Of a DNA stretch of 64,000 bases, positions 12,228 through 43,600 are shown in pieces. Numbering within the stretch: position 1 is the first letter of the stretch; every line of letters begins with the position of its first letter. Both the position numbers and the translations under genes were made by a program. The stretch is from contig NC_068993.1 of assembly GCF_001194135.2 (NCBI RefSeq), forward strand, positions 45,097,431 to 45,161,430, read 5' to 3'. The DNA is from Octopus bimaculoides. Lineage: Eukaryota. The notes beneath the pieces are model-generated. The model saw nothing but the letters and a program-made list of their open reading frames with translations, had not been told where the DNA came from and searched no databases.

Positions 12228-12331
12228 GCACATGCAAAGATTTTGGGGTGCTTCTGGAGACTTTTGGCAAACAACATGGAACAACATCTTTAGTTTGTTC
12301 AATGAAGATGAAATGTTAGTTGGTGTTGTAG
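12228..12331 (+). CDS. FAXDC2: FAXDC2 coding exon 2
   Basis: ttttcag|G...G|gtaag. Encodes (W)HMQRFWGASGDFWQTTWNNIFSLFNEDEMLVGVV(G), similar to the vertebrate FAXDC2 motif WHLQRFWGASG.FWQ. Confidence 0.93.
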
Positions 12332-13511: not shown

Positions 13512-13633
13512 GAACAACTCTGTTTACGTTTACGGTATTTTGGTTGGCAAACAGTTTTCTTATATTTTTGGATGTCACTGGTATGCCTTCGTCATTGTTG
13601 CGCTACAAAGTCCAGCCTGATAAAAATACCCCG
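13512..13633 (+). CDS. FAXDC2: FAXDC2 coding exon 3
   Basis: atttcag|GA...CCG|gtaag. Encodes TTLFTFTVFWLANSFLIFLDVTGMPSSLLRYKVQPDKNTP; splice phases match both neighbours. Confidence 0.93.
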
Positions 13634-16131
13634 GTAAGTATTATGCAAATGAATTCAAATGCCCTTGTTTAGTATTCAGACTTAATCTCATGTATTATTT
13701 GTCCCCTGGAACATTCTGGTTTAGCCCTTTAGTATTCAAATTACTTTGTCTTGTATAATGTTTATTTATTCACATGGGTTTGAATTAGTCATACATTATC
13801 TTGTAGCTTTGAAATTTCAATGATGTGTTTATTTTTAGAATAATACTGTAGGGTAAGTGGTGCGAGGGGCCAGATCTGGTCAGTTTGAACATTAAACAGG
13901 TAGAATATTTGAGCCAGATCTGGCTGGTTTTAAATGCTAAAGAATTAATGACATTGCTAGTCAAACACTTTTTCTAGTTGAATAGGACTGAATACTCTGC
14001 ATATTCCTGGCTACACTACCCTCGATGTGAAGTGTAAGGGAGAGAGAGAGAGAGTGTGTGTATGTGTGTGATGGAATGGATGGGGTGATACAGGGAAATT
14101 TGTGAAACTTGCCAAAATATGTATCATTGTTTATAGATACAAACCACTTTATGGTTTGCAGCTGTGTTTGAATACTTCAAGCAGAGTTACTGCTTTTTTC
14201 CCCCCATCTTCTTCTCTCTTAGATATATGTATCCTTCTTGTAGTTATTGAATACCACAGATGCAGACATAGCTATGCGGTTAAGAAGTTTGCTTTGTAAG
14301 AATGTGATTTTGGGTTCAGTCCCACTGTGCAACACCTTGGACAATATGGCTTCCAGGTTGACTAATGCTTTCTGAATGAAATTAGTTGATTGAATCTGTA
14401 TGAAAGCCCATTCTGTGTATGATTTGTGTGCTTGCTTACATTCTATGAATACTTAAGCGAAAGTTATATGTTGATATTAAACCTGTGTGTGTGTACCTTT
14501 GTGTATGTGCTTACATTCTATGATGTCCTCATGAAATTTTATAAGCAGCAACTTCATGTTGACTTCCCCTGTCAACAAATTGCCCCTGTAGCTTCTTGCT
14601 CTTGAAGACAAGTGGAATAAATATCCCTTGCATGAAAAATTTTGAAGGATTAGTGACAAAAAGGACATCCAGCTGTAAAATAATGCCTTGTGAATAAGGC
14701 CTCATCCAACATGTGCTTGCATAGGAAAATAGGACATTAAACGAAACCCAGGAATTATAAATTTTGTTGTCCCTACATATAAAACTAAATTTGTCATCAT
14801 TGAGGTCCAATAACTATTACACTTGATACACCACACAGAGGAAACATTTTTAGATTGAACTTGCTTCTTGCAATTTGTTGCATGGACACAACTAATGATA
14901 ACAAATCAATCCCTCTCTCTCTCTCTCTGGGAGAAAGGCATAAGCACATACACAGACATATACACACACGGCAGTAACTTCCGCCTACCAAATTCAATCA
15001 CAAAGCTTTGGTCGGCTCGGGGCTATAGCAGAAGACACTTGCCCAAGGTGCCACGCGGTGGGACTGAACCCGACCCTTTTGATAACAACCCATTTGACAC
15101 TGTCCTTGAGCCTTTGATACGAACTTCCTCTCTTAAAATGATTTAAATTAAAAGTTTCCATCAAAACTTCCCAAACACCAGCTTAACAATGACAGAATTA
15201 TTTTAAGAAGTTCTTCATTATTTTGAAGAATTCAATGAAACAAAGGCAGTGGATTTCAAGGAAAATTTGGTAACATAACAAATATATATGAAACTTTGTT
15301 TAACTTCTGTCCTTAGTGGTTTTGAAAACATGCAAACTTAAATCATAAAATATATGATTATGCAACTAACTCCCACTCCCTAAAATTACTGACCTTGTAC
15401 CAAAATTTGAAACCATTTTTATTACTGTTCATCATCATCATCATCATTCAACATCTGTTGTCCATGCTGGCATGGGTTGGTAAAAATTTTATTATGCAGG
15501 AATAAAGAGTCACCAGTTGAGTAAGGTATGGCAAACCTCGCAGAGACTACAACGCAAAAGGACTTTTCACTTAGTATGTTGCTGAGACCCCCTTCAGTCA
15601 TGACTAACCATGGGATTGCACCTGGAAAGTTACCCTCCCAGGCACAAGTCTGGGCAAGGTTGTTTATGGAAGACCAGCAGTCGCCCATGCATACCGGCCT
15701 CCCCTCTCCACGCCACCAGTGCTATCCAAGGGAAAGGCAAAGGCAAGAGCTTGGCACTTGTGACATCACAACTCATTTCTACAGCTGAGTGAACTGGAGT
15801 AACGTGAAATAAAGTGTCTTGCTCAAGAACACAACATGCAGTCTGGTCTGGGATTCGAACTCACAACCTCACAATCGTAAGCTCGACACTCTAACCAGTG
15901 AGCCATGTGCCTTCACGACGCAGTATGTAGAATATGCAATATTGACATTCATTCATACACAAAACAAAATCAACAACAAAACTTTATCACTCATTCTTGG
16001 ACAAGAAACCTTTGTTTAAAACATTAAATATCACCATGATGCATGCAAACTGATTTCTTAAATTTTGTAAAATATCATACTGTTATTAGATATAAACTAT
16101 TTATTTTCAAATGTCTTTATTCTCTTTTCAG

Positions 16132-16337
16132 CTTGCAATGAAGGATTTGAAGAAAATTTGTCTGAGAGTTTTGTTTAACCAAACAATTGTTGCCCTGCCA
16201 ATGAGCTTTTGTACTTGCTTAGTTATGAAATGGAGAGGATGTCCTGTTAGTGGAGACCTGCCAACATTTCAGTGGGTTCTCTTGGAAATTGCCGTATTCA
16301 CTCTTATTGAAGAACTGGGATTTTACTACTCCCACAG
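16132..16337 (+). CDS. FAXDC2: FAXDC2 coding exon 4
   Basis: cttttcag|CTT...AG|gtaag. Encodes ...VLFNQ...LPTFQWVLLEIAVFTLIEELGFYYSH(R), the start of the first histidine box. Confidence 0.95.
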
Positions 16338-18149
16338 GTAAGTACCTGTTACCTTGTACTCGTTTCAGTCATTGGATTTTGGTCAAGCTGGGGCACTGCC
16401 TTGAAGGATTTAGTTGAACAAATTGCTCCCAGTACTTATTAAGTCGGGTATTTATTCTGTTGGTCTCTTTGTCAAACTGCTAAGTGACAGGGGCATAAAC
16501 AAACCAACACTAGCTGTCAGGTGGTGATGGAGAATAAACACAAAGATGCACGCATACACACACACACACACACACACATGCAATGGGCTTCCACACAGTT
16601 TCTGCCTACCAAATCACTCTCGGAGCATTGGTCATTTTGAGGTTGTGGTAGAAGACACTTGCCCAAAGAGCTGCACTGCAGGTCTGAACCTGAAACCACA
16701 TGGTTACAGAGCAAGCGTCTTAACCATACAGCCCTGCCTGTAAGTTTTTATGCTTCAAATTTATATACTTTAAGACTGACATGAAAGTTTAATAGACTCT
16801 AGACTTGAATCTCTTACATTTTATAACTGCCAGTTGTAAAAGTGAAATAATTCTGAATTTAAGCAATTTATTTCTTTACTTCTTTTGATGAAGAATGTTC
16901 CAGATCGACATTTTAATATACTTTATGTACTTGAAGTTGAAGTTTCTTTCGTCTGTTAAAAAAATATCTCACAAAGTGCTGAAATATTCAAACTGTTTTT
17001 TCTAAACTCTCAGTTTTTCTCTTAATTTTATTTATTTTTTTCACGATTCTTAATAGACATTTTATACCCCTTGAATTTATCCCAAAATATTTTATCTGCT
17101 GCTTTATTGAAACAGTCTTTTTTTTTTCACCTATTTTTTAGTGTGGATAGCATTTATCTATTAAATAACATTTATAATATATAAAATAAATTTAGTTTCA
17201 GAGAAGACAAAAATAAACTTCATTATAGTAGTTTAGGGTAAAATAACATTGTTCTCAGTTTGATATTATTCTGACAAATCGAAATTATATTTTGGGTGAC
17301 TGTAGTTTTGAACAGCGCGTAAAAAGCATTCAGTTCTCACTGGCATTTGGAAGGGCATCCAGCTGTAAAAACCATGCCAAAACTGACCTTTCCTGTGCTT
17401 GTGCAACATAAAAAGTTCTCTGTCCACTCTGCTGTGTGGTTGGTGTTAGGAAGGGCATTCAGCTGTAAAAACTGCCAAAACAGACACAGGAATCTGGTGC
17501 AGTCTTCTGCCTGGCCAGCTCCTGTCAAACCATTCAACCCATGCCATGATGATGATGATGGTATATACGTATGTGCAGGTATTGCTGAGTGGTTAACAAG
17601 CTTGCTTTCCAATCATGTGATCAGGTTCAGTACCCAGAGCAAATGTCTTCTAATATAGCTCCAGGCTGATCAAAGTCTTGTGAGTGAATTTGGCTTACAG
17701 AAACTGAAAGAAGTCCATCATATGCATGCATGCATGCATACATATACACATACATATGTACCTATGGGTGTGTTCCCCTTTGTCTTGATGTCATAGGATA
17801 AAGGAGCATTTCCATCTACCAGTGGTGTCCCTTGTGTCCAGTCTTCCATGAAAACATATTCAGCTGTGGGAAAATATTACCTGGCTTGAAAACAAAGGCA
17901 TTGGCACATGGAAAATCTGCCTTGACGAATTCCTTCTGACCAATATTAGCATGGAAAAGTGGATGTTAAAATGATGATAATAATGATAATATAAGAAGAT
18001 GAGATGTATCTATCAGCCTATTTTTTGTGGGGTGAGTGTTACCTATATTATGAATGAATGATATACTTTTAAAACTAATTTCTATATCTACTTTTATAAT
18101 TAACTTCAAAAATCAAATCTATTTAATTGCATTTCATTTTTATTTCCAG

Positions 18150-18422
18150 ACTTCTGCATCACCCAGCCTTATACAAATACATTCACAAGATACATCATGA
18201 ATGGACTGCTCCAGTTGGCCTTGTATCTGTCTATGCTCACCCACTTGAACACGTTATGAGTAACATGCTGCCACCAGTTCTTGGACCCATCATTATGGGA
18301 TCTCATCTGGCAACATCTTGGCTGTGGTTCGCTCTGGTTTTGCTGTCCACCACTGTAGCACACAGTGGTTATCATTTCCCCTTTCTCCCATCACCTGAAG
18401 CTCATGATTTTCATCACCTCAA
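18150..18422 (+). CDS. FAXDC2: FAXDC2 coding exon 5
   Basis: tttccag|A...AA|gtgagt. Contains the fatty acid hydroxylase/sterol desaturase His boxes (H)RLLH, HKIHH, YAHPLEH, HSGY and HDFHH. Confidence 0.96.
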
Positions 18423-19033
18423 GTGAGTAAAGTAATTTAGTCATAAGCTCCAGTAATTAACCCCAAAAATGTTTGTTTGGTTGAAATCAAGTACCATATT
18501 TGATGGCGTATAAGACCCACTTTTTTCCACAAAGATAATCTCAAAAAAACCACCCTGGGTCCTATATGTGAAGTTGGGCCTTTTTTACATGCTTTAATGC
18601 ACTAACCATGTGAAGGTGTGTAGCTTAGTGGTTAGGTTATTTGGCTCACTAGCATAAGGTCATGAGTTCAAAAACCGGCGGTGCACTTTGTCCTTAAGCA
18701 AGACACTTTATTTCATGTTGCTCCAGTCCACTCAGCTGGCAGAAATGAGTTGTACCTGTAATTCAAAAGGGGCCAGCCTTGTAACATTCTGTGTCACACT
18801 GAATCTCTCTGAGAACTACATTAAGAGTATGCATGTCTGTGGAGTGCTCAGCCATTTGCACATTAATTTCACAAGAAGGCTGTTCTGTTGATCAGATTAA
18901 CTACAACCCTCATTGTTGTAACCCCTGGAGTGCCAGTTTAATGCACTAAAAACTTCCTTTTGCTAAAATAGGGGTAAGTCTAATATTTCTCTGTGTCTTT
19001 TATGCCATCAAATATGAAAGATATATTGGAGTT

Positions 19034-19199
19034 TAGTTCTATATTTAAGAGATGAGGAATTATGTACATTATTTTCATTATTTACATTTGACAGATATTT
19101 GTCCTCATCTTATTTGTTGTTAACACGGGCATATGGCGTAGTGGTTAAGAGCGCGGGCTACTAACCCCAAGATTCCAAGTTCGATTCCAGGCAGTGACT

Positions 19200-19241
<42 letters not shown>

Positions 19242-19377
19242 TTGAAAAATACCTTGGGAATGAGAATCCAGGTTCGAAATTTCCCCAAGACACCTGATGA
19301 AGGCTGGAGGGTATATCAGCCGAAACATGTTAACAACAAACAAGATGAGGACAAAAATCTGTCAAATGTAAATTATG
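19034..19377 (+). mobile_element. Non-autonomous PLE-associated element (inverted tail + tRNA head + (AAT)n + hammerhead) in FAXDC2 intron 5
   Basis: 12-bp TSD TATATTGGAGTT at 19022-19033 and 19378-19389. A box TGGCGTAGTGG and B box GTTCGATTCC. 19081-19126 is an inverted repeat of the 3' tail. Confidence 0.85.
19289..19335 (+). ncRNA. Hammerhead ribozyme motif, 3' side damaged
   Basis: GACAC-CTGATGA-A-GGCTG-GAGGGTATAT-CAGCC-GAAAC with a perfect 5-bp stem II. A few nucleotides after GAAAC are missing compared with the other copies. Confidence 0.6.
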
Positions 19378-19768
19378 TATATTGGAGTTATATTAGTGAA
19401 GCTATCCCAATTGAATGACTAATGTCTGTATGATACAGTCATTTATCTAATCCAGTAGGCAGTGAGCTGGCAAAAACATTAGCACACCGGGCATAATGCT
19501 TAGTGGTATTTCGTCTGTCTTTATGTTCTGAGTTCAAATTCCGCTGGAGTCGACTTTGCCTTTTATCCTTTTGGGGTCTTTAAATTAAGTACCAGTGAAG
19601 TACTAGGGTCGATCTAATTGACTGGCCTCCTCTCCGAAAATTTAGGGCCTCGTGCCTCGAGTAGAAAATATTTACCTAATCTAGTTATTCTCCTCCCTTA
19701 CTCAAAATCTATTTGCATTCCATCAAAACCAATAATTCTGATCGACCTTTATTTTCAATTCTTATTAG

Positions 19769-19949
19769 GTTCAACCAAAACTATGGCATTCTTGGAGTCC
19801 TTGATCGTCTTCATGGCACCGATAATCTGTTCCGTGCCAGTCCTGCATATGAGCGCCACATTCTTTTGCTTTCTAAGGTACCCATGTCTGTGCAGTACCC
19901 TGATTCTTCACCTAAGAAATCAACCAAGAATGAGGAGAAAACTGAATAA
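19769..19949 (+). CDS. FAXDC2: FAXDC2 coding exon 6 (terminal)
   Basis: ttattag|G; encodes (K)FNQNYGILGVLDRLHGTDNLFRASPAYERHILLLSKVPMSVQYPDSPKK... to TAA at 19947-19949, followed by AATAAA repeats. Confidence 0.95.
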
Positions 19950-30933: not shown

Positions 30934-32725
30934 TATATGCATATATATATGTACATATATGTACATACCTTCATCTACAAGTACATATAGATACATATCT
31001 GGGTAGATGACGTTGCAAAAGAACATGGACAAAATTATAAACAAGGTACAAAAAACAAGCAGGCATTAAAAAGTTGAAATTCTGAAAAAGTCTTCTTTTC
31101 AAAATTGTAATCTTCAATCTCCATATTTCCAAATGTAGAATTCCAAAAATATTTTCAAAAATGGTGCAGCTAAAAATTTGGGCGGGTGAAGAACAAATCA
31201 AAAATTTGAAAAATTATTTTTTTTGCAGAACTTTGTTGTTGAAAATAGGAATCATAAAACATTTGAAAAAAAAAAAAATGTTGTAAATGTGGTGCTGTAT
31301 TCGATATGGCTGGCTAGATATTGTCAAATAATATCAATAATTCTCTTTTTTTGGCATATCTGCACAAGTGTACCACTATGAATTTGTTTCCTTGTAACTG
31401 TAAGAAAATTAGATATTTTTAAATGGAATTTTCTGCAAATATCCTTCAGATTGTGTCTATTCTGATTGTACAGGAATTTGCAGGAGAAGTAGAATTTTTT
31501 GGAGGTGGGAGGAGTTTGATAATTGACACGAGTTTAATTTGTTTCTTCATAGCTTTTAGAAACGTGTAATTTTTGATGAAATTTTCTACAAAAACTTTTC
31601 AGGTGGTGTAGAGTATGATTGTATTGGAAAATACAGATGGAATTTCACTACATATGCTAAGAACACAGCAACTGAAAGAATGAAAATGAAGTTTAAAACT
31701 GTTGTGAGGGTTAAGTTGCCTGCAGATACATATGGGGAAAATGTGAAAGCCATTGTAATTGATAAAGACAGATACTATAGGTTGAAGGAAATGTGTAACA
31801 TTGATCCGCTGGGATTTGCGGTGGAGTTTGATGAACTGCCGTTATTTTTGTGATGTGCTTCAATATGGGTGATTTCTTTTTTTCTTTTTTATTACATTAA
31901 ATTCCTATTTAATCGTAATCTACAGCATCTGAAAGGTATATGCAGAAAATTTCAATAAAAAATACCCATTTTTCTGAAAGTTATGAGGAAACAAAATTAA
32001 CTCAGGTGAATTATCCGAAACGCCTTTCCTGCACCCCGAAAACATTTTAAACCACAAATTGCAATACAAATGAACTCTACACCATCTGAAAGATATTACC
32101 AGAAAATTTCAATAAGAAATATAAATTTTCCTGGGAGTTATCAGGAAGTAAAGTCGTGATGAGGCACATACGCGTAGGTATGACATTTTTTTTTACGCAA
32201 GCTAATATCGAACCTGTTACCCATACTTTTAAATATCTTCCTGCTAATTAATTATTCTGTTAAAATTCAAACCGGCAACCCCTCTTTTATAATGTTCTAT
32301 TTCTAATTAGATGCTTGGGACATAAATAAGAAGAAAACATTCGTTTCACTTTTTTGAAGTTTCAATTTTTAAAAGCGAAAATGTTTTAATGTATTTCTGG
32401 AAATTGGGAGTCGTAAAACAGATATAAAAAGTTTCGTACGTATATCTCATATTTGCTGATATTTTAAATTGAATTGAATTTGATTTATTTGTTTCACATT
32501 TTCTTCCTGTTTACTTCATATAGATATTTATTTCCAAAAATATATACGATATTTCGATGGCATAAAATTTCAACAGCGCATATTTAAGAAAACAATTTTT
32601 TTAACATGTAAATATTTAAAGTAACTTGGCGTATAAAACCCAGATTTATTTTTGACAAAAAAAAAAGTGCATCTAATATGCTATCAAATTACGGTATTTA
32701 TTTCTGTTTCCCTAAAGAATAGAGC

Positions 32726-32869
32726 TGGCATGGGCAACCTTTTTGGAGAAGCGGGTCGCATGAGACATGAGTCATTATCGGGAGAGTCGCACTATTGAGA
32801 AAATTGAATGTAATATTTCATTTGGTGTACCATTCAGAGAGTCCACGAGCCGCAGGTTGCCCGTGATTG
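32726..32869. mobile_element. hAT-like MITE
   Basis: Imperfect TIRs CATGGGCAACCT / AGGTTGCCCGTG. Confidence 0.55.
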
Positions 32870-33780
32870 GAATGCAGTCTGAAGTTATCTTGTGCAGCGG
32901 TTCTCAACCATTTTTTTGCCTATGGACTCCTTTGAGGCGGAGGTAAATAATACGTAACAAAAGCCCTAACCCTAAACACCGGGTGTACGTATTCTTTACT
33001 TTCGTCCCCTTTGATTCCTATTTTACTCGAGTGGACCCGTTCAATGTTTTAAAAAATTCTATTTTTATAATTCAATATTATTTGGAATTGTATAAAAAAA
33101 AAACTGTTGAAATATTTTGTGTATTGTAGAANNNNNNNNNNNNNNNNNNNNNNNNNNNNNNNNNNNNNNNNNNNNNNNNNNNNNNNNNNNNNNNNNNNNN
33201 NNNNNNNNNNNNNNNNNNNNNNNNNNNNNNNNNNNNNNNNNNNNNNNNNNNNNNNNNNNNNNNNNNNNNNNNNNNNNNNNNNNNNNNNNNNNNNNNNNNN
33301 NNNNNNNNNNNNNNNNNNNNNNNNNNNNNNNNNNNNNNNNNNNNNNNNNNNNNNNNNNNNNNNNNNNNNNNNNNNNNNNNNNNNNNNNNNNNNNNNNNNN
33401 NNNNNNNNNNNNNNNNNNNNCAGCGACCGTTGTGACAGGACGTTTTTCCAGGCTCTGTGACAACATCGACCCCGACATGTGGTCGAAGCTTCCTTTGGTA
33501 TTATAGCGGCATGCTTTTCACCCGGGAACCAAACGGCTCTACACCAACCAGGAATAAATTATTGATCTGTTGTTACCGTTGACCCTCGTGTTTGTTGTAT
33601 TTCTGAATTTAATAAATAATATAAGAGCTGGGGAGAGATAGCCAAGCCATCATATCTCATCCAACTCTTATAATATCAACAAAGAAAATATTTTGTTACA
33701 TATATAATACGTATGCATGTCTAAATAGTACAAAAAGACAATAAAAAGGAGAGAAAGAAAGCAATCTCTACACTAGTATA

Positions 33781-33904
33781 CAGGATGTCCACGAAGTCTG
33801 GGTACATGGGAATTAACACTTATAAGAAATTATTATTTCTTATATTTAATTGTTTATATTATGATTTTATTTACTACATGTACCCAGACTTTGTGGACAC
33901 CCTG
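33781..33904. mobile_element. Tc1/mariner-type MITE, 124 bp
   Basis: TIRs CAGGATGTCCACGAAGTCTGGGTACATG / CATGTACCCAGACTTTGTGGACACCCTG with TA on both sides. Confidence 0.85.
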
Positions 33905-36269
33905 TATAATTATAGTAGATGTATACAGCCTGCCCTCCACTTAATTTACATATAAGGTAACAGTAATGAGGTTACAGAAGACAATACTATAACCAGAGAT
34001 TTTAAGTAATTCTATTTCTTTAAATAAATGAAACTGTAGAAATGATCGTGTGTTCTGTTAATTGGAAAATTCACTTCAATGTTCGTTAACAAAGATTACG
34101 TTTCACTCATTGACAACCTGGCTGCGGTTAACTCCCGAAAGAATAGAAACTGCACAGAGAATATCGACGATAGTGCAATATATCGTTACTGGCTGTATAT
34201 TATGATGTTATACGAGTCAGTGAGGGAGTCACTCCATGGTTGCCCAACCAGCTGGAAATAATTGACAAATATCGCACAAACCATACATTATTGTTTTGTA
34301 AAAAGAAATATATATTGGATAATGTTGTACTAATATATAAGTCAATATGGTTTCGGCTAGAATACTTTTGATCAAAAAGACCTGTTTGATTCTAAGTGCC
34401 GTGAGACGAGACTGAATGACAACAGATGTAATGTGTTCATGGTCAAGATATAGAACATCCGATGACTCACTTCAGCTAGCTGCAAATAATCAGCAGCAAC
34501 ACTGTTTATGAGTAAGTGGAGTTTGTTGGTAGACGCATTATTTTCGACCTGGTTATATTGATAAATTTACTACATTCATTTTTGTGATACAGACCGGGAA
34601 AGTAAAACTCAATGTGTGTGTGTGTGTGCGCGCACACACATTCACATAATTCAGTTTGCTATGCAACTCCACGTTCTTTCTAATGTACATTTTTGAAAAT
34701 CATACAAATGTACAGCCGTATTTATTTTAAATTTTAGATTAATCTCCATATCTATTCTGTACATTTTCAGCTTCATTTATTCCTTTCCATATTATTACTT
34801 GTATGGATAAGTAACGATTATATAAAATTATTATTTTTTTAATTGGCAGAAGTTGCAAAGTGATTCAGGGACCAAAAGTTTCGTGTATGATATTTTTGAT
34901 TAAGTGCCATGTACGAAACTTCCAGCTCTTGAGTCGCTTTGCAACAGCTGCCAATTAAAAAATAAATCCATTGCGTCACTTTTTTCCTTTTTTCTTTTTT
35001 TTTTTTTGTAATAGGTGAAACACACAGCAAACTCAAGTAGAAGCTCTTTGAGGAATCCCTGAAAGAAAGTGCATTTTTGTGCCCCTTGTCTAAATGTTTC
35101 AAATCCACTATTGCCCCATATTTGAATAAACTGGAACACATTAATTATAGAAACATTCAAGAATTATAATACTGAACTTATTGTATGCAGTGATTAGGTG
35201 CANNNNNNNNNNNNNNNNNNNNNNNNNNNNNNNNNNNNNNNNNNNNNNNNNNNNNNNNNNNNNNNNNNNNNNNNNNNNNNNNNNNNNNNNNNNNNNNNNN
35301 NNNNNNNNNNNNNNNNNNNNNNNNNNNNNNNNNNNNNNNNNNNNNNNNNNNNNNNNNNNNNNNNNNNNNNNNNNNNNNNNNNNNNNNNNNNNNNNNNNNN
35401 NNNNNNNNNNNNNNNNNNNNNNNNNNNNNNNNNNNNNNNNNNNNNNNNNNNNNNNNNNNNNNNNNNNNNNNNNNNNNNNNNNNNNNNNNNNNNNNNNNNN
35501 NNNNNNNNNNNNNNNNNNNNNNNNNNNNNNNNNNNNNNNGAGAATTCTGGGTATGAAATAAATATCTTCAAAAGTTATGTCCTTGAGTGTACTAAATAAA
35601 AAAAAGATGACTAGAGTTATAGTTGGAAAGATGATGGATGATTTAAATTTCCAATTCTTAATTTATTTTATGCTGCAACTTCTACCAGTTATTCATTTTT
35701 AGGTTTGTTACCTTTAGAGTATATTTGTCCCCAGAATGACTTTGTATTTCCTCTGGTTTGTAGGCTGATTGATCGACAAGAAACAAGTTCCTTCTAAACG
35801 ATACTTTGTCCTTCCACTATTGTATAGAACAGGTAGGACGAACATTATGTCCTCACATTCATCTGTGCAGATTTCAGTATCCTTCAGCATTGTGAATTCG
35901 GGACTGACAAGTTATTTCATTAAACCATGAAGCATTTTTCTCTCAGTGCCTATAGCAGAACCCACTCTATTGCAAGCATTTGGGCTGGGTTTCCAGTTTG
36001 AGATTCCTCCCTCCCTCCTACATAACCTGTTACAAGGATATTATAACAGATTACAGGCACCATCTTTCCTCTCTTTCCTGATTAAAGGACCAAATAAAAA
36101 GGGTTTTTTTTGGTAATTTTGTAAAGAAGGAAGCAATTGAAGGCATTGAAATGAGAAAGTATCTGTATGGCTTCGTAATATTCACATGCTAGCACTATTT
36201 GGATGATTCTGGTTATTGTTTCATATTTTTAAAATATCTTTTTTTTTTCAGTGTAAAATCCTGCTGAAA

Positions 36270-36380
36270 ATGTCCAAGCATCTTGGCGTTAGTTCTTTCC
36301 CTTTACCTCCCATGCAATATGTCAGGTACTGTACTGATGAAAATATGGCAAAAGGAATACCGGCACCACCACCAACTCAG
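36270..36380 (+). CDS. MED7: Mediator subunit 7-like, coding exon 1
   Basis: Acceptor ttttttcag ends at 36251, ATG at 36270 and donor CAG|gtaaaa. Encodes MSKHLGVSSFPLPPMQYVRYCTDENMAKGIPAPPPTQ, matching the MED7 N-terminal motif PPPMQY..YTDEN...G.AP.PPP. Confidence 0.88.
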
Positions 36381-36480
36381 GTAAAATTTATTTCCAATTG
36401 ACAAAANNNNNNNNNNNNNNNNNNNNNNNNNNNNNNNNNNNNNNNNNNNNNNNNNNNNNNNNNNNNNNNNNNNNNNNNNN

Positions 36481-36910
36481 CACACTTGCGATCTTCAATT
36501 CAGTTTCTGTGCCCATTTTCACCCATCATTGTGAATGTTGGGTAATGACTAAAAGAGTACAATTCAAATACAAGCAGTTGAAATGGGGTTTCTTCAAAGG
36601 ATCTCTGGAGTAATAGTGCTTGACAGAGTGCATAGCTTGGAGTCACTTCAGGTGGAACTGCTACTTTTTCCACAAAAGGTCATAGCTTCAATACTATGGA
36701 CATGTGATTAGAATACTTAAAAGATGGATCATGAGAAGGATCAAGCAGACTGGCAGGGAGAGGCCTAGGGTTAAACAAAAAGCAAGATGGTTGGATAATA
36801 TCCATATTCTCATTTGGTCACACTTGGGAATTCAGCCAGAATGTGTAATGACAGTTGTTTCTGATGGGACCCAATCAAGGAGGTACCTGAGGTCTCTAAT
36901 CCCTATAAAC
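36481..36910 (+). mobile_element. RTE-clade LINE RT C-terminal fragment in the MED7 intron
   Basis: Frameshifted translation gives VPI.T..CECWVMTKR...QAVEMGFLQRISG...LQYYGHVIR...RPR..KARWLDNI, typical of the region after the RTE RT domain. Confidence 0.7.
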
Positions 36911-37065
36911 CTCTTAGGATAGCAGGCACTGAAGATAAATGGGTGGATAGACAAAATAAGTTTAAATATACTGACATTGTATATTATGAAAGCATTTCAC
37001 TCCTGAAAAATCTTGCTGAAATGTTTTCTGTAGCATGAAACCTATTTTCCCATTGCCTTTAGATT

Positions 37066-37440
37066 GTTGTTGTTGGCACTCTGTTGCTTATGACGTCGAG
37101 AGTTCCAGTTGATCCGATCAATGGAACAGCCTGCTTGTAAAATTAACGTTTAAGTGGCTGAGCATTCCACAGATATGTGTACCCTTAATGTAGTTCTCAG
37201 GAATATTCAGTGTGACAAGGCTGACCCTTTAAATTACAGGCACAACAGAAACAGGAAGTAAGAGTGAGAGAAAGTTGTGGTGAAAGAGTACAGCAGGGTT
37301 CGCCACCATCCCCTGCCGGAGCTTCGTGGAGCTTTTAGGTGTTTTCGCTCAAACACTCATAACGCTTGGTCTGGGAATCGAAACCGCGATCCTATGAACG
37401 TGAGTCCGCTGCCCTTAACCACTGGGCCATTGCGCCTCCA
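37066..37440 (-). mobile_element. tRNA-derived SINE family D in the MED7 intron
   Basis: 12-bp TSD TGCCTTTAGATT (37054-37065; 37441-37452); colinear with 54555-54944. Confidence 0.85.
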
Positions 37441-38123
37441 TGCCTTTAGATTAGATGTAAATCAATGAACATAAAAATCAGAGAAAACATGTACCACTCT
37501 ACAGAACTCTGTTAATGCATGGTTTTCTTGAATGTAATACTTCAATAATATGGAATACTGTGTAAAAAGTACTCAGCCCATTCAGTGGAGTGGTTGGTAT
37601 TTGGAAGGGCATCCAACCATAAAAAACCATACCAAAGCAGATACAGAAGTATGGTGCAGGCTTCTGCCTGGTCAGCTCCTGTCAATCTGTCCAACCCATG
37701 CCAGCATGGAAGGAGGACATTAAATGACGATGATGATGTAATACTTCCATAATATAGGTGATGTATATATTAAGATAATGAATGCAATTAGGGTTAATCT
37801 GGGTTAAACTCCTCATCCCGTTTTAAAAAAAGGGGATGCAACAAAGTTTGCAGGAGATTTTCTCTGGCTGAATGCCTTTTCTGTTGCCATCCCATGCTTT
37901 TGAGTAAGGTAATATTTTCTTATGATCAAACATCTTCATAGAATTCAATCACAAGACATTGGTTGATCTGGGGTTATAGTTGATGACACTTGGCTAAAGT
38001 GTTGCACAATGGGACTGAACATGAGACCACATGGTTGCAAAAGTGAGCTTCTTAACCACACAGCCATGCTTGTACCTATATAGAAATAATTATTTTTACA
38101 ATTTTTTTTTTTTTTTTTTGCAG

Positions 38124-40604
38124 GAGGACTACACAGTATTTGGTGTACCTTCCAACATTAATGATCCCATCCAGACATTAGAATCCCAAGGACTTACGCA
38201 GTTATATCCTGAAAACTGTAATCGAAAAAAGGAAATGAAGAAACTGAACCATTCCATTCTTGTGTGCTTTCTAGATTTGATAGACATACTTATTCAAAAT
38301 CCCAGCTCTTCAGACAGGAACGAAAAGCTGAATGACCTGCGTTTACTATTCATAAACCTCAATCACCTAATCAATGAAATCCGACCAAATCAAGCCCGGG
38401 AAGCATTACGAATGATGATGATGAAGCAAAAGTGTCAAACAGTTGAACTATTGAATGATCTTGAAAAAAAACTTGCTGAGGCCAAAGAATTGATAGCAAA
38501 AAGTATACAAAATCTGCAAGTTTCCAATCCAGATGATTGTGAAGCTTTTAAATTATCTGGTTTGTTAGAATCCGGGTCATGTAGATTGAATGAAAACATA
38601 GAAATGACTTCTGAGTGTTCTGTACAAGATTATACCATCAATACAATAGAATACTTAAATGAAGTTTGTAATTTTGGAAGAGAAGATTCTGTAATACAAT
38701 CTGAAGTGAAAATGGAAAACATTGACTGTAAAAGTAAAGTTTTAGCTGCCCAGGAAAGTAATAGGGACTTGGGTGCAACTGGAGGAAAGGCATGTTTTGA
38801 TTCTAAACTTTCAGTTAGAAATACTGCTGATGTGAAAATAGAGAATGAAGATATTTTAACCAATACTTGTGCTAACAAGAATCAGAAAGATATGGAATTC
38901 ACGGATAGTATGAAGGTTACAGCAGACTACATTGGACTTTCAAACAGCTTGCTTGCTGCTAAGAATGGTGTGCAGCTGGCTTTGTGTGAAGTCAAAGCCA
39001 TGTCAGAAGATCTAGACCTTTCAGAGTGTAAGCAAGGTGTTATAAATAATACTAATAAGACATGTATAGATGTGATAGAAAATGAAGAGTGCAATGTAAA
39101 ACTGGAGAGAAAAAGTAAAGATAGCTGTTCTGAAGATATTGGTTCTTCCCAAAGTGAATCTGTGGATGTGTGTTTCTCACAGAGTAAACAAGATGAAGAT
39201 GCACAATCTAAACAGGAAGCTGAAAGGGACAGTACACATGAGACTGGAGATGATTTACCACTCTTGCAGGGAGCTGAAAATGAAGTGTCACTCATTCATG
39301 TTAAGCAAGGGTGGGAAAGAGATGCGTCACTTGAGAGACAGGCTAAAGATGATGCGTCTCTTGTGCAAAGTGTTGGGGGTGATGTGTCACTTATGAAAAG
39401 TGAGCAAGGTGGTGAGAGCAATTTGCAAAGTAAACAAGGTGATGTGCTCTTCAGGCAAAATAAAAAAGAAGCTGAGGGTGACTCAAGACTTGTGTCACCA
39501 AACCGGAACTTGGAAGATGATACTCAATTTCTGCTGTATAAACAGGGAAGTGAAAGAGAGATGTTGCTTCAAGAGACATCAGATAACTTGGTTGCAATGG
39601 AGAGCAGAAAGCTGTTGGCCAGAGACACAAATATAGAGGAGAGCAAAGAGGAGATTTATGACAAAAATATTGGGGAAAACAAAGAGATTTATGATGACAA
39701 AAATATTGGGGAAAACAAAGAGATTTATGACAAAAATATTGGGGAAAACAAAGAGATTTATGATGACAAGAATATTGGGGAAAACAAAGAGACATATGAC
39801 AAGAATATTGGGGAAAACAAAGAGATTTATGATGACAAGAATATTGGGGAAAATAAGGAGGAAATTTATGACATAAATATTAGGGAAAGCAAAGAGGAAA
39901 TTTATGAAGATACAAATGTAAGGAAGAGCAAAGGAGAAATAACTGATGACACAAATATGGGAGAGAGCAAAGGGAGGGATTTTGGAACAAATGCTAAAGA
40001 GAGCAAAGAGGACATCCATGATGATACAAATATATGGGAGACCAAAGAGGTAACAAATATTGATGAAGGAGTAGTGGAGAGCAAGGAAGAGATGCCATGT
40101 GGCAAAATATTAATGACAAATCAAGAAGAGACGACAGGTGATATGAGTGCTACGAAGAATCAAGAAGAGACGGCTAATGACAGTAATGTAGTGGAAAGTC
40201 AAGAAGAGACTGCTTGTGTCACGAATGAAGTAGAGAGTCAGGAAGAGGCTGATTGTGATGCAAATGAGGTGGAAAACCAAGAAACAGCTTACAACATAAA
40301 TGCAGAGAGTCAAAAAGAGATGGATAGTAGTGTGAGAGGATTGGAGAGCCAAGATGAGAGGGGTGATGGCAGAGGCATAACGGAGAGCAAGAAAGAGTGG
40401 GAGGGTAATATAAATGTGGCAGGGAGCCAAGAGGAAATGGCCGGCAATGCCAGAATAATGGAAAGCCAAGTGCCATCGAAAAGTAACAAAACTACTGATG
40501 ATGATCCTGACAATGTAAGTACCTTGCAGGGTAAACGGAAACATGATGATGATGTGGGTCATGAAGAAATGAAGAAAAAATTGGAAGATAACTTTTCAAA
40601 TTAA
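38124..40604 (+). CDS. MED7: Mediator subunit 7-like, coding exon 2: MED7 core plus ~690-aa acidic repeat-rich extension (863 aa in total)
   Basis: The poly-T tgcag acceptor at 38123 is in phase 0 with exon 1. EDYTVFG...LESQG...KKEMKKLNHSILVCFLDLIDIL...EKLNDLRLLF...HLINEIRPNQAREALRMMM matches the MED7 family. The frame stays open to TAA at 40602-40604. Confidence 0.85.
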   Translation, partial: EDYTVFGVPSNINDPIQTLESQGLTQLYPENCNRKKEMKKLNHSILVCFLDLIDILIQNPSSSDRNEKLNDLRLLFINLNHLINEIRPNQAREALRMMMMKQKCQTVELLNDLEKKLAEAKELIAKSIQNLQVSNPDDCEAFKLSGLLESGSCRLNENIEMTSECSVQDYTINTIEYLNEVCNFGREDSVIQSEVKMENIDCKSKVLAAQESNRDLGATGGKACFDSKLSVRNTADVKIENEDILTNTCANKNQKDMEFTDSMKVTADYIGLSNSLLAAKNGVQLALCEVKAMSEDLDLSECKQGVINNTNKTCIDVIENEECNVKLERKSKDSCSEDIGSSQSESVDVCFSQSKQDEDAQSKQEAERDSTHETGDDLPLLQGAENEVSLIHVKQGWERDASLERQAKDDASLVQSVGGDVSLMKSEQGGESNLQSKQGDVLFRQNKKEAEGDSRLVSPNRNLEDDTQFLLYKQGSEREMLLQETSDNLVAMESRKLLARDTNIEESKEEIYDKNIGENKEIYDDKNIGENKEIYDKNIGENKEIYDDKNIGENKETYDKNIGENKEIYDDKNIGENKEEIYDINIRESKEEIYEDTNVRKSKGEITDDTNMGESKGRDFGTNAKESKEDIHDDTNIWETKEVTNIDEGVVESKEEMPCGKILMTNQEETTGDMSATKNQEETANDSNVVESQEETACVTNEVESQEEADCDANEVENQETAYNINAESQKEMDSSVRGLESQDERGDGRGITESKKEWEGNINVAGSQEEMAGNARIMESQVPSKSNKTTDDDPDNVSTLQGKRKHDDDVGHEEMKKKLEDNFSN
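39651..39857 (+). repeat. Coding higher-order tandem repeat (33/36-nt alternation, 3 x 69 nt) in the MED7-like exon 2
   Basis: Units start at 39651, 39684, 39720, 39753, 39789 and 39822; they encode EIY(D)DKNIGENK. Confidence 0.95.
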
Positions 40605-43600
40605 GTAAAAGACTAAAGAACTTGAAACTTGGGTATTAATATGCACAATTCTGAGAAAGACTTGGTGCAGGTTATGCACAATTCAGAAAAATTGATACTA
40701 GTATAAAAAATTTTAAAGTGACATAATGAGGGTTTTGCATGTACAAATCCAAAAATTTTGATGATGTATGCACAATTCTAAAATGGACTCAATGCAAGTT
40801 ACTGACAATATCAAAGAAAGAAAAGGACTTGATGTGCAAAATTCTGAAACAGTTGATGCAGTTTATGTCCAGTTCTGTGAGACTTGCACAGTAATTCCAA
40901 AATGATCTTGATGCTCATGCAAGTTATGCACAAATAAAAGAAATTCTTGATGCAAGTTATTTACAATTCTGAAGATGAATTGCAGTTCATGCATACTATG
41001 CACAATTCCAGAAAGGATTTAAGTGTCTGTAAAGTTTATACATAATTCTGAAAAGGACTAGGTAGTAGTAGTACTAGTATAGATTTCATGCACGAGGCTG
41101 AATATAATTTTAATTAACAAAACTACAGGAACATGCAATAGACCAAAAGTGACAGATAAAAGTGTAATTGTGTGAAAATTGGTAAATTACTAAGAATGTT
41201 GCATTTAACTGGCTGCAAGAAATGTATAAGTTGTGGCAAAGTATGAAGAATTATTTTTTTTGATATGGAAAAGGAATTCCATATCATATATTTCCCAGGC
41301 TCTTCTTTATCAACTGAGACCATTCCAACTGAAACTCAAACTCTATTTTATATTTATCAACACTGCTGCACTGCCAAAGATAATGTTTTTGGTTTTGCTT
41401 GTGCTTTTGTTTCTGACAGTACTATCTGTTCATTACAACTGTAAAATGACCACCTCAACTAAACACCCTCCCCCACACCACATCTCTGTTGATTCACCAA
41501 GAAGTGATAAATTACAGAACTCTACATAATTGTAGATTGTTCTTAAATACATTATAACTGAAAGGTTCATAATTCCAAAACTCCTAGTTACATATTTCTG
41601 ATCATCCAGCTGGCAATCTGATCCCCTTTTACTTTGAATATATTTTGAAATCTATGAAGGATTTGCCTGTCTTTGTTCTTTAAAAAACAGAAAACAAAAC
41701 AAACTTTGTGAGTGACATGCTAAGACAGCTGTTGTGAGAATATTCCAAACATCTTCAATTTCATACAGGCAATGTCACTAACTTTTCTCATCAAACAGTA
41801 GTTTAATATTTTGAAGTAATATTTTAAAAATCAATGTATGCATGCTTACATGTATGTGTGGTTTGCATATGCCTAATATACAAATCTCTTTTGTTCAAAC
41901 CATGACTGCTTGGAACCAAAATTCTTAATTTTTTTACTCAAAGGTCACACTGCATTTTTGATTTGAAGTTACCATTCCCATATGGTTGTGCCTTATCTAC
42001 TATCAACCTCGTAGTTTTGAATTTGTGAAAGTTTGTCTCCTGCAAGAATTATATAAATTTTGACAAAGCTGTAGTGCATTTTATTACTTTTTTTTAAAAT
42101 TTTAGCTAAGAATGACAAATGTTTATGTTTATAAATTCAATTTTTAAATGTTAATTCAGTTTTTGTTTCTTCTTTAACACTACATCATTAACTTTGCCCA
42201 AGTTACCATCTAGTGGATAGTTCTCATAAATTCTATAATAGCCAGCTGTTTTATTCTCTTTTTCATTCAGCTTTGCAGCATTACAAACTCTGATATAACA
42301 GTCAACATTCTTACAAGCTGAATAACTGAACTTAACAGTTCCTATTTGATAACTTGCTATATTTATGCTCTGGTGGGAAATGTCAATTTTGAGTTCATAA
42401 TCACATTAATATCTGACTCACTGTTATCAGTGTTTGCTTTCATAAAATCTAAAGCCTACATCACTGAAGTTTTGGTTATTGAGGGATAAAAGTCAGCTAT
42501 ATTGAAATGTGTGTATTTACAGATTTTGTTCTCATTTATCTAGCAATGTTATCCCAGTTCTTAAATGTTACCCCATAACCTTAATGAGGAAGCTTCTTTT
42601 ACTTTGAAAATGATTTTTTTCTTTTTTTTTTTTGCTATCTACACCTAACTCTGGCTTTGCTGGATAAATTAATTTACACCTAGAGTTACTTTCGAAGTTT
42701 ACTTTATGGTTCTAAAGTATTATAAAAGGGGATTAGGGTGCCAAGCATTCTACCCTATTATCCCTCTTTAGCTTTGCTGATAACTCTTTGAGTTCTAGTT
42801 TTGTAAACTTCCTCTCTAGATATTTTTAATTCTATTGTATCATTTGATGAAAGCATTTTATATGTCTCTTTTTGTTGTACCTTGTACCAGAAGAAACATG
42901 CAACTTATCTGATTTGTGTAGATATTTTTATCTAGTTTCAGTCATTAGACTGGCCATGCTGGGGCACTACCTTGAAGAATTTTAGTTGAACAAATTGACA
43001 CCAGTACTTAGAATAAGTACCAGGCTTTACAAAAACTATCAGTTTGTTTTGCCAAACCACTAAGTTATAGGGACATAAACACACGAACACCGGTTAAGGA
43101 GTGGTGGGGAACAAACATATACAAAGGCACACACATAACGGGCTTCTTTCAGTTTCCATCTACCAAATTCACTTGCAAGGCTACGATTGGCTTGAGGATA
43201 TAGTAGCAGACACTAGCCCAAGGTGCCATGTAGTGGGACTGAAGCCAGAACTACGTGGTAGGAAAGAAAGCAGACTTACCATACAGCCACACCCATGAAC
43301 ATCAAATGTTCATTCAACTTCTTCTGGAAGTTAATGCACACATTATGGCATGTGATTCTTTTGTAAGATGTTGAAAAAAATCTTCAGATCTTAAAATGTT
43401 TATGCAGTGAATTCTTGCAAGTTCTGGAGCCAAGTATTTTTGTTGTTATAACATCCAGGTTATCCGCTATTTTTTTTGTGGAAAATAAATTCCAGTGCAA
43501 ATTGTAAAAGAGAGTGATGTCTAGCATTTGTCTCTTCTAGTGTTTCTGCTATTGTCCAGACCTCATTACAATAGAATGGAGTTGTTCCAGTGTCTGGAAT

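What the first reader, a model, noticed from the sequence alone, without database searches (positions are those of the whole stretch)
36270..40604. MED7-family protein with a ~690-aa acidic low-complexity C-terminal extension
Seen: two exons splice in frame to 863 aa. The MED7 core ends near 38520, and the frame stays open for ~2.1 kb more, encoding an E/D/S/N/K-rich region with several nested repeat generations (QSKQ.., EIYDKNIGENK, VESQEETA). A stop-free 2.1-kb stretch in DNA this AT-rich suggests selection. Known: MED7 is normally a small (~220-250 aa) Mediator middle-module subunit that pairs with MED21. Inference: a long acidic disordered tail could alter Mediator architecture or condensate behaviour in this lineage, or mark a specialised paralog.
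Basis: partly seen in the sequence, partly recalled or inferred. Interest (0 to 1): 0.7.

Follow-up and report, generated by a model that had tools for sequence, protein, structure and literature searches.

The report
Octopus-only MED7 duplicate with acidic tail
Octopuses keep a normal copy of the transcription-machinery protein MED7 and also a second, fast-evolving copy (this gene) that carries a 290-690-residue acidic, repeat-built tail, so this is a lineage-specific spare version of a core Mediator part, not a change to the standard one.

Summary
Exon 1 (36270-36380) and exon 2 (38124-40604) join GT-AG, in frame, to 863 aa. This equals the Octopus bimaculoides RefSeq protein LOC106880515.

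The N gap (36407-36480) starts 26 nt into the intron. Its flanks are colinear with the O. sinensis intron, so it does not touch the reading frame.

Residues 7-161 are a full-length MED7 domain (Pfam 2.4e-41; human MED7 structures 7e-43). The remaining 693 aa are acidic (net charge per residue -0.12, pI 4.35).

This is not the octopus MED7. A canonical 219-aa MED7 lies on the same chromosome and is identical in three Octopus species (dN = 0). The long gene ("MED7L") shares its intron position, so it arose by DNA-level duplication.

MED7L is also present in Argonauta. Its core there has changed about 11 times faster than the canonical one.

The tail frame is maintained. Neutral drift predicts about 11 stops and none is seen. 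dN/dS is about 0.6, and nearly all indels are multiples of 3. The tail has no homologue outside octopods and grows by tandem repeats that differ between lineages.

Mediator incorporation, expression and condensate behaviour remain untested.

The parts
36250..36251 (+). AG splice acceptor (polypyrimidine tract plus CAG) 18 nt upstream of the ATG. It implies at least one upstream 5' exon.
   Evidence: Sequence. The same acceptor is present in O. sinensis and in Argonauta, where it splits the ATG. The O. vulgaris model CAI9732018.1 splices FAXDC2 onto it.
36270..36380 (+). Coding exon 1, aa 1-37. It holds the proline-rich MED7 N-terminus (FPLPPMQY, PAPPPTQ).
36381..38123 (+). Phase-0 GT-AG intron. 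It contains the assembly gap 36407-36480 and a SINE-like insert at about 37255-37440.
   Evidence: The intron position is identical to that of the canonical octopus MED7 gene.
38124..38522 (+). Exon 2, MED7 core part (aa 38-170). These are the helices that pair with MED21 in solved Mediator structures.
   Evidence: Pfam Med7 142 bits. PDB 7emf_G 6.7e-43. AF2 pLDDT 70-94, and the only Foldseek matches at E <= 0.001 are human MED7 chains.
38523..39629 (+). Proximal tail, aa 171-539. It is non-repetitive and moderately acidic. Predicted helices lie at aa 204-220 and 301-331. Short [DE]xSL units lie at about aa 420-480.
   Evidence: It aligns with Argonauta only up to about aa 304.
39630..40517 (+). 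Distal tail, aa 540-835. It is a degenerate tandem array of about 23 units of 11-13 aa. It includes the young O. bimaculoides-specific EIYD(D)KNIGENK expansion, about 8 units at 39624-39907 by TRF.
   Evidence: The expansion is absent from O. sinensis and from the third octopod (207-nt gap).
40518..40604 (+). C-terminal 28 aa plus the TAA stop.
31500..34500 (.). Island without CpG depletion (CpG observed/expected 0.7-1.1 against a 0.1-0.3 background). It is a candidate MED7L promoter or 5' exon region and is interrupted by the gap 33132-33420.
   Evidence: A colinear island lies at the same place in O. sinensis. The promoter role is inference only.
9439..19946 (+). Neighbouring gene FAXDC2 (six coding exons). 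It is the conserved neighbour of MED7L in Octopus and Argonauta.
   Evidence: tblastn. Argonauta locus.
40640..41063 (+). Degenerate 33-40-nt direct repeats (TATGCACAATTCTGAAAA...), at least 7 copies, just after the stop codon in the presumed 3' UTR.

Best explanation
The locus encodes MED7L, an octopod-restricted paralogue of Mediator subunit MED7.

**Origin.** It arose by DNA-level duplication on the same chromosome as the canonical gene, before Octopus and Argonauta separated.

**What it kept.** The N-terminal 170 aa retain the MED7 fold, including the proline-rich stretches that bind MED31 and the long helices that bundle with MED21.

**What it changed.** It lost the conserved metazoan C-terminal motif (CDxLDRxMCDIVD). 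In its place it carries a polyanionic, mostly disordered tail of 290-690 aa that grows and shrinks by tandem-repeat turnover.

**What selection preserves.** The reading frame and the acidic composition are kept. The exact sequence is not.

**Most likely mechanism (inferred).** MED7L substitutes for MED7 in a subset of Mediator complexes, or sequesters MED21 and MED31. That would place a long negatively charged flexible arm on the middle module, and its function would depend on charge and length. Expression is probably restricted or low.

**Shown:** the gene model, the paralogy, the age, the rate difference, frame maintenance, composition and the repeat dynamics.
**Inferred:** Mediator incorporation, the role of the tail and the expression pattern.
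For: **Domain and fold**
- Full-length Med7 profile match and alignment to solved human MED7 across the splice junction.
- AF2 model with a confident core; the only Foldseek PDB matches at E <= 0.001 are MED7 chains.

**A canonical copy exists**
- P0131 (219 aa) is identical in O. bimaculoides and O. sinensis, and in O. vulgaris from Met57.
- For the canonical gene, dN = 0 and dS = 0.088 between O. bimaculoides and O. sinensis.
- In O. sinensis it lies 1.6 Mb from MED7L on the same chromosome. In O. bimaculoides and Argonauta the two genes share a chromosome or scaffold.
- The phase-0 intron is in the same place in both genes: PPIQ|DSYM against PPTQ|EDYT.

**Age of the duplicate**
- An Argonauta MED7L orthologue lies next to FAXDC2. 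It has the same two-exon structure and is 457 or 506 aa in two haplotigs.
- The MED7L clade has 500/500 bootstrap support.

**Rate of change**
- Core dN between Octopus and Argonauta is 0.23 for MED7L against 0.020 for the canonical gene.
- MED7L keeps 56 of 74 highly conserved MED7 positions; the canonical octopus protein keeps 71 of 74.

**Constraint**
- Core dN/dS is 0.29-0.44.
- Tail dN/dS is about 0.6, below 1 with p about 5e-4 in the two comparisons with the third octopod and p = 0.03 for O. bimaculoides against O. sinensis.
- A neutral simulation expects 10.7 stops, and 0 of 5000 replicates are stop-free.
- All distinct tail indels (3 to 207 nt) are multiples of 3, apart from one -1 and one -2 in a single species.

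**Tail properties**
- Net charge per residue is -0.09 to -0.12 in both Octopus and Argonauta, although the tails are unalignable past about 130 aa. All tails fall on the disordered side of the charge-hydropathy (Uversky) boundary.
- pLDDT is below 50 over most of the tail.
- An exhaustive HMMER search with the tail against 1.84 billion representatives found only the octopus cluster plus unrelated repeat proteins.

**Motif loss**
- An HMM of the canonical C-terminal motif scores no tail above shuffled controls.
Against: **No direct evidence of expression or assembly**
- No RNA, protein or interaction data were available.
- No RNA-derived fragment of MED7L appears in the protein collection, whereas canonical MED7 and FAXDC2 do appear as mRNA-like contigs. 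This hints at low or restricted expression.

**The core has changed at conserved sites**
- 18 of 74 highly conserved MED7 positions are changed.
- Near-invariant ones include human-numbered R57Q, R66Q, N88C, H120N and H129N in Octopus.
- Argonauta has E125G, P128S and R132N.
- These changes might impair Mediator assembly.

**Constraint on the tail is weak**
- A tail dN/dS of 0.6 is only mild constraint.
- One octopod (run SRR11869384) has a 1-nt deletion that stops the frame at about aa 625, seen in 3 contigs.

**The duplication date is unresolved**
- The tree places MED7L at the base of the molluscs on a long branch.
- Support for a cephalopod-specific origin is only 25%.
Confidence: 0.6

Rival explanations
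1. MED7L has left Mediator. It is a neofunctionalised or decoy protein that keeps the MED7 fold, but either acts outside the complex or titrates MED21 and MED31 as an inhibitor.
For: - Its core changes about 11 times faster than the canonical one.
- It has replaced near-invariant residues.
- It has lost the conserved C-terminal motif.
Against: - The core is still under purifying selection, with dN/dS 0.29-0.44 over short times and at most 0.18 against Argonauta.
- The MED31-binding proline stretches are retained, and so is the heptad-like helical core LNHSILVCFLDLIDILI...LLFINLNHLINE.
Confidence: 0.22
2. This is the lineage's MED7. The tail would then remodel Mediator in all octopus or cephalopod cells.
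For: UniProt names it 'Mediator of RNA polymerase II transcription subunit 7'.
Against: - A separate canonical 219-aa MED7 exists in every octopod examined.
- That gene is under extreme constraint: identical protein in three Octopus species and 97% identity to Argonauta over the first 175 aa.
Confidence: 0.02
3. The tail is not part of a real protein. Either the long ORF is an annotation artefact or a decaying duplicate, or the true product is a FAXDC2::MED7L fusion from read-through transcription.
For: - O. vulgaris model CAI9732018.1 is an in-frame FAXDC2::MED7L fusion. Alternative isoforms in that annotation come from PASA transcript assemblies (PMC10700109).
- The ATG exon has an acceptor directly upstream.
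- One octopod carries a frameshift in the tail.
Against: - Frame maintenance across three Octopus-clade species and Argonauta cannot be neutral.
- In O. bimaculoides a 2-nt difference after the acceptor puts the same fusion out of frame.
- In Argonauta MED7L is on the opposite strand to FAXDC2, so read-through is impossible there.
- A conserved island without CpG depletion 2-4.5 kb upstream suggests the gene has its own promoter.
Confidence: 0.08

Closest known systems
Canonical metazoan MED7 (Pfam PF05983; human MED7 in PDB 7EMF chain G; octopus XP_014782169.1)
   Same: - The whole Med7 domain is present: the proline-rich N-terminus, the helices equivalent to MED7C, and an acidic stretch after the core.
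- The single coding intron is at the identical position.
- Both genes lie on the same chromosome.
   Different: - Size is 457-863 aa. The 199 family members retrieved have a median of 220 aa and a 5-95% range of 192-265 aa.
- The conserved C-terminal CDxLDRxMCDIVD motif is absent.
- Amino-acid change is about 11 times faster.
- 18 of 74 highly conserved positions are replaced.
- It is restricted to octopods.
Lineage-specific paralogues of Mediator and general transcription factors (own knowledge: vertebrate MED12L, MED13L and CDK19; Arabidopsis MED7a/MED7b; germline TAF paralogues such as TAF7L and the Drosophila tTAFs)
   Same: It is a duplicated subunit of the basal transcription apparatus, retained alongside an unchanged original. 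That pattern suggests a specialised variant complex.
   Different: - The known animal Mediator paralogues belong to the kinase module and come from whole-genome duplication.
- The plant MED7 pair is near-identical.
- Here a middle-module subunit was duplicated locally, diverged strongly and gained a new tail.
- Tissue specificity is unknown.
Long disordered regions of Mediator subunits MED1, MED15 and MED25 (PMC7921410)
   Same: It is a long non-globular segment attached to a structured Mediator anchor.
   Different: - Those regions are Ser/basic-rich or Q-rich, and they are ancient.
- This tail is polyanionic (pI 4.35), repeat-derived and lineage-specific.
- No activator-binding or condensate data exist for it.

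Membership tests
MED7 (Pfam PF05983) | Full-length match to the Med7 profile above the curated cut-off | tested here: met
   142.4 bits against a cut-off of 25.8. Profile positions 1-189 of 189 match aa 7-161.
MED7 (Pfam PF05983) | Sequence and fold equivalence to MED7 in solved Mediator structures (proline-rich N-terminus plus long helices) | tested here: met
   phmmer against 7emf_G gives 6.7e-43 over aa 6-177. The AF2 core has pLDDT 70-94. Foldseek matches at E <= 0.001 are human MED7 chains only, at 1.7e-6 to 7e-6.
MED7 (Pfam PF05983) | Conserved metazoan C-terminal motif CDxLDRxMCDIVD at the end of a protein of about 220 aa | tested here: not met
   The HMM of the last 45 aa of 163 canonical proteins scores at most 0.9 bits in every MED7L tail, below shuffled controls with a maximum of 10.4. 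Length is 863 aa against a family median of 220.
MED7 (Pfam PF05983) | One-to-one orthology with the single MED7 of other animals | tested here: not met
   A canonical MED7 is present in the same genomes. MED7L forms its own clade on a long branch.
MED7 (Pfam PF05983) | Physical heterodimer with MED21, binding of MED31, and presence in purified Mediator | not testable with these tools
   This needs co-IP or AP-MS, or complex prediction. Only retention of the interface-type sequence was seen.
Processed retrogene | Loss of the parental introns | tested here: not met
   The phase-0 intron is kept at the same codon as in the canonical gene, in Octopus and in Argonauta.
Pseudogene or decaying duplicate | Stops or frameshifts, and dN/dS not different from 1 | tested here: not met
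   There are no stops in O. bimaculoides, O. sinensis, O. vulgaris or Argonauta. The neutral expectation is 10.7 stops, and 0 of 5000 replicates are stop-free. Tail dN/dS is 0.6 (p about 5e-4) and core dN/dS is 0.29-0.44. Exception: one 1-nt deletion in the distal tail of the SRR11869384 octopod.
Condensate-forming Mediator disordered region (MED1/MED15 type) | A long intrinsically disordered region | tested here: inconclusive
   Charge-hydropathy places the tail on the disordered side, and pLDDT is below 50 for most of it. However, two proximal helices reach pLDDT 70-78, and no dedicated disorder predictor was available.
Condensate-forming Mediator disordered region (MED1/MED15 type) | Phase separation or partitioning with the transcription machinery | not testable with these tools
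   This requires experiments.

The most novel reading that the evidence does not exclude
Octopods assemble a second, alternative form of Mediator. In it the middle-module subunit MED7 is replaced by MED7L, whose long polyanionic, repeat-evolving arm changes how the complex engages chromatin, Pol II or activators in particular tissues such as nervous system or germline. This would be a lineage-specific variant of the core, non-kinase part of Mediator, retained since before the Octopus-Argonauta split.
Probability: 0.3. Interest if true: 0.65.

Novelty: new variant of a known kind. Interest (0 to 1): 0.45.

Why it matters
Core Mediator subunits are usually single-copy and very conservative in animals. 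The known animal paralogues sit in the kinase module.

Here a core middle-module subunit was duplicated locally and kept since before the Octopus-Argonauta split. It was freed to evolve about 11 times faster and gained a new acidic repeat tail, while the original copy stayed frozen.

If MED7L enters Mediator, it would be a natural experiment in adding a charged disordered arm to the complex. It would also be a candidate contributor to cephalopod-specific gene regulation.

The gene is present in databases only as 'uncharacterized protein', and no paper in the searched library mentions it.

The finding is also a caution for annotation. UniProt labels this protein as MED7 itself, and one O. vulgaris model fuses it to FAXDC2.

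Tried and rejected
1. **Tail derived from the canonical C-terminal motif by stop loss and tandem duplication.**
   - An Argonauta repeat unit (KPIDFEDK...VEKVDNLS) resembles the canonical end (KPMDIEPC...DIVDNLS).
   - The Smith-Waterman score of 42 does not exceed the best shuffles, 43-50.
   - The family HMM finds nothing above shuffled controls.
   - I keep this only as a lead.
2. **AF2 on a 3-sequence alignment.** pLDDT was about 30 everywhere, including the core, so the model was uninformative. I repeated the prediction with 65 sequences.
3. **Homologues of the tail elsewhere.** The only non-octopus hits were unrelated tandem-repeat proteins that match the EIYDKNIGENK array by periodicity.
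4. **MED7L in squid, cuttlefish or nautilus.**
   - Profile and core searches gave only canonical MED7s below the octopod hits, with a gap from 599 to 249 bits.
   - These word-indexed searches also failed to list P0001 and P0002 themselves, so this absence is not firm.
5. **Identifying the species of run SRR11869384, and papers on the gene.** Neither search returned anything.
6. **Retrogene origin.** Rejected because the intron is conserved.
7. **tRNA gene in the intronic SINE-like element.** None was found.
8. **TRF on the 3' flank.** It found nothing. The degenerate repeats there appeared only with seed-based repeat finding.
9. **DNA locus of O. vulgaris MED7L (P0129).** It is not on record.


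Full report
**1. The observation**

The window is Octopus bimaculoides chromosome sequence. An ATG at 36270 opens a 111-nt exon that ends at 36380 and is followed by GTAAAA. A long T-run plus CAG ends at 38123, and exon 2 runs from 38124 to the TAA at 40602-40604. The spliced product is 863 aa. It is identical to RefSeq XP_052828417.1 / XP_014785981.1 (LOC106880515, 'uncharacterized protein') and to UniProt A0A0L8I8Q3.

The assembly gap flagged by the scan (36407-36480) begins 26 nt after the donor, so it is intronic.
- Both flanks align colinearly, at about 93% identity, with the gap-free O. sinensis intron.
- That intron has 40 nt with a poly-A run where the window has 74 N.
- The Pfam and PDB alignments cross the exon junction with no missing residues.
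- The gap therefore does not affect the frame.

The tail frame is far more open than chance allows.
- Base composition alone gives P of about 1.6e-26 for no stop in 2082 nt.
- The two other frames of exon 2 contain 54 and 110 stops.

**2. What the protein is**

Residues 7-161 match the whole Pfam Med7 model (142 bits, 2.4e-41). Residues 6-177 align to human MED7 from solved Mediator structures (7emf_G, 6.7e-43).

An AlphaFold2 model built on a 65-sequence alignment is confident in the core (pLDDT 70-94). Its only Foldseek PDB matches at E <= 0.001 are human MED7 chains.

Those chains are modelled for only about 160 residues. The canonical short acidic C-terminus is therefore itself unresolved in structures.

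**3. It is a paralogue, not the octopus MED7**

- Cluster look-up shows a canonical 219-aa MED7, P0131. The same sequence is XP_014782169.1 in O. bimaculoides and XP_029644127.1 in O. sinensis. It also occurs in O. vulgaris, and a 220-aa version occurs in Argonauta hians.
- I recovered the coding sequences. The canonical protein is identical in the three Octopus species, with dN = 0 and dS = 0.088 between O. bimaculoides and O. sinensis.
- The canonical gene has one coding intron, phase 0, at PPIQ|DSYM. The long gene has its only coding intron at the homologous codon, PPTQ|EDYT. The duplicate therefore arose at the DNA level and not by retroposition.
- Both genes lie on one chromosome. In O. 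sinensis they sit at 54.68 and 56.27 Mb of CM046871-equivalent record CM016871.1. In O. bimaculoides both are on CM046613.1. In Argonauta they sit at 2.51 and 15.12 Mb of one scaffold.
- I call the long gene MED7L.

**4. Distribution and age**

MED7L orthologues with tails were found in four further sources.
- O. sinensis: 790 aa, with the same two-exon structure.
- O. vulgaris: 790 aa.
- An unidentified octopod from SRA run SRR11869384, on a genomic contig.
- Argonauta hians: next to FAXDC2 but on the opposite strand. It is 457 or 506 aa in two haplotigs, which differ by one 49-aa repeat unit.

In the window FAXDC2 occupies 9439-19946 on the + strand.

Core and profile searches returned nothing else closer to MED7L than to canonical MED7. 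These word-indexed searches also failed to list P0001 and P0002, so absence from decapodiform cephalopods is provisional.

In a neighbour-joining tree the MED7L clade has 500/500 bootstrap support and sits on a long branch at the base of the molluscs. A sister relation to cephalopod canonical MED7 gets only 25% support, so the upper age bound is unresolved.

**5. Evolutionary rates**

| Comparison | Canonical MED7 | MED7L |
|---|---|---|
| Protein distance, Octopus-Argonauta | 0.039 | 0.544 |
| Core dN, Octopus-Argonauta | 0.020 | 0.23 |
| Highly conserved MED7 columns retained, of 74 | 71 | 56 |

- The replaced positions include near-invariant ones: human-numbered R57Q, R66Q, N88C, H120N and H129N.
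- The MED7L core is still constrained. dN/dS is 0.29-0.44 among Octopus-clade species, and at most 0.18 against Argonauta, where synonymous sites are saturated.

**6. The tail**

*Constraint*
- dN/dS is about 0.6 in all three pairwise comparisons. Fisher p is about 5e-4 for the two deeper ones and 0.03 for O. bimaculoides against O. sinensis.
- I placed the observed 285 substitutions between O. bimaculoides and the third octopod at random. This creates on average 10.7 in-frame stops, and 0 of 5000 replicates stay open.
- All distinct tail indels (3, 6, 9, 12, 15, 21, 39 and 207 nt) are multiples of 3.
- The exceptions are a 1-nt deletion (AAAA to AAA) and a 2-nt difference near the end, both in the third octopod. 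The deletion stops its frame at about aa 625. The shifted downstream frame is still open for 175 codons and aligns. The truncated product occurs in 3 contigs.
- That event is therefore either recent, a polymorphism or an error. It shows the distal array is not strictly required.

*Architecture*
- aa 171-539 are non-repetitive. Two helices are predicted at moderate confidence (aa 204-220 and 301-331), and short [DE]xSL units follow at about aa 420-480.
- aa 540-835 are one degenerate array of about 23 units of 11-13 aa.
- The EIYD(D)KNIGENK units at its start (about 8 by TRF, 39624-39907) are an O. bimaculoides-specific expansion. This accounts for 863 against 790 aa.
- Argonauta instead amplified a 49-aa unit that is single-copy in Octopus, at about aa 262-300.
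- Beyond about aa 304 the two tails cannot be aligned.

*Composition*
- Both tails have the same make-up: net charge per residue -0.09 to -0.12 and pI 4.3-4.5. Both fall on the disordered side of the charge-hydropathy boundary.
- The 49-aa tail of canonical MED7 is similarly acidic, at -0.14.

*Homology*
- An exhaustive HMMER scan of 1.84 billion representatives with the tail alone found only the octopus cluster and unrelated repeat proteins.
- The conserved metazoan C-terminal motif (consensus ...PCDPLDRLMCDIVDNMT) is not detectable in any MED7L tail.

**7. Transcription unit**

- The ATG exon is preceded by a polypyrimidine tract and a CAG acceptor at 36250-36251. The acceptor is conserved in O. 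sinensis and Argonauta, so an upstream exon must exist.
- O. vulgaris model CAI9732018.1 joins an internal donor in the last FAXDC2 exon to this acceptor in frame. That annotation adds alternative forms from PASA transcript assemblies (PMC10700109). Read-through transcripts therefore probably exist in that species.
- In O. bimaculoides two extra bases after the acceptor put the same junction out of frame.
- In Argonauta the two genes converge, so read-through cannot occur.
- An island without CpG depletion lies at about 31.5-34.5 kb (CpG observed/expected 0.7-1.1 against 0.1-0.3). It is colinear with one in O. sinensis and is a candidate own promoter. This is inference.
- No RNA-derived fragment of MED7L is present in the protein collection, unlike canonical MED7 and FAXDC2. 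This is weak evidence for low or restricted expression.

**8. Interpretation**

Shown:
- MED7L is an octopod-restricted MED7 paralogue produced by DNA-level duplication.
- Its core evolves fast but remains constrained.
- Its tail frame and acidic character are maintained while the sequence turns over through repeats.

Inferred:
- It retains the proline stretches and helices that bind MED31 and MED21 in canonical MED7 (established from Mediator structures; PMC7921410 for the MED7-MED21 bundle).
- It therefore most likely competes with MED7 for these partners.
- That would either produce a variant Mediator with a polyanionic flexible arm, or act as a decoy.
- Which of these holds, and in which tissue, needs RNA and protein data.

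**9. Comparison and novelty**

- Among 199 MED7-family proteins retrieved, the median length is 220 aa.
- Apart from the FAXDC2::MED7L fusion model (P0126), only the octopod MED7L proteins and one N-terminally fused wasp model exceed 450 aa.
- No paper in the searched library mentions MED7 in octopus or any accession of this gene.
- I rate it a new variant of a known kind, of moderate interest.

Noticed in passing
window 31500-34500; L002 3500-7000: An island without CpG depletion (CpG observed/expected up to 1.1) sits in an otherwise CpG-poor region. It is conserved in position in O. sinensis and lies 2-4.5 kb upstream of the MED7L ATG exon. It is split by the N gap 33132-33420. It is a candidate promoter.
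   Followed up: partly
window 40640-41063: At least 7 degenerate copies of a 33-40-nt unit (TATGCACAATTCTGAAAA...TTGATGCAAGT) lie directly after the MED7L stop codon, presumably in the 3' UTR. Similar text follows the stop in the third octopod's contig L001.
   Followed up: partly
window 19860-19890 and 36250-36270; O. vulgaris protein P0126: O. vulgaris has an annotated in-frame FAXDC2::MED7L fusion isoform of 1126 aa. It uses a weak internal donor (AT|GTCTGT in the window) in the last FAXDC2 exon. The same junction would be out of frame in O. bimaculoides because of 2 extra bases after the acceptor.
   Followed up: partly
window 37255-37440 (MED7L intron): A SINE-like element that looks tRNA-derived lies in reverse orientation in the intron. 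ARAGORN calls no tRNA. The O. sinensis intron alignment skips 37049-37440, so this is probably a lineage-specific insertion.
   Followed up: partly
window 50453-51151 (+): An intact 232-aa ORF made of tandem C2H2 zinc fingers, a family known to be expanded in octopus.
   Followed up: no
window 51759-52814 (+) and 62746-63627 (-): Two ORF fragments (51759-52172 and 52377-52814) look like reverse transcriptase. A transposase fragment that looks Tc1/mariner-like is broken by an assembly gap. Neither was scanned against a family library.
   Followed up: no
L005 20343-22707 (-) and L006 19994-22652 (-), Argonauta hians: Two Argonauta scaffolds (probably haplotigs) carry MED7L alleles of 457 and 506 aa that differ by exactly one 49-aa tail repeat. 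The start codon appears to be split by the upstream intron (A|TG).
   Followed up: partly
L003, L008, L009: Canonical MED7 is head-to-head with BBS7 in O. vulgaris, O. bimaculoides and Argonauta. The O. vulgaris model P0005 carries a doubtful 56-aa N-terminal extension from a distant upstream exon.
   Followed up: no
(search behaviour): Searches with the MED7L core or with a MED7L profile did not list P0001 or P0002, although these contain the query. Negative results from this word-indexed search should therefore be treated as non-exhaustive.
   Followed up: no
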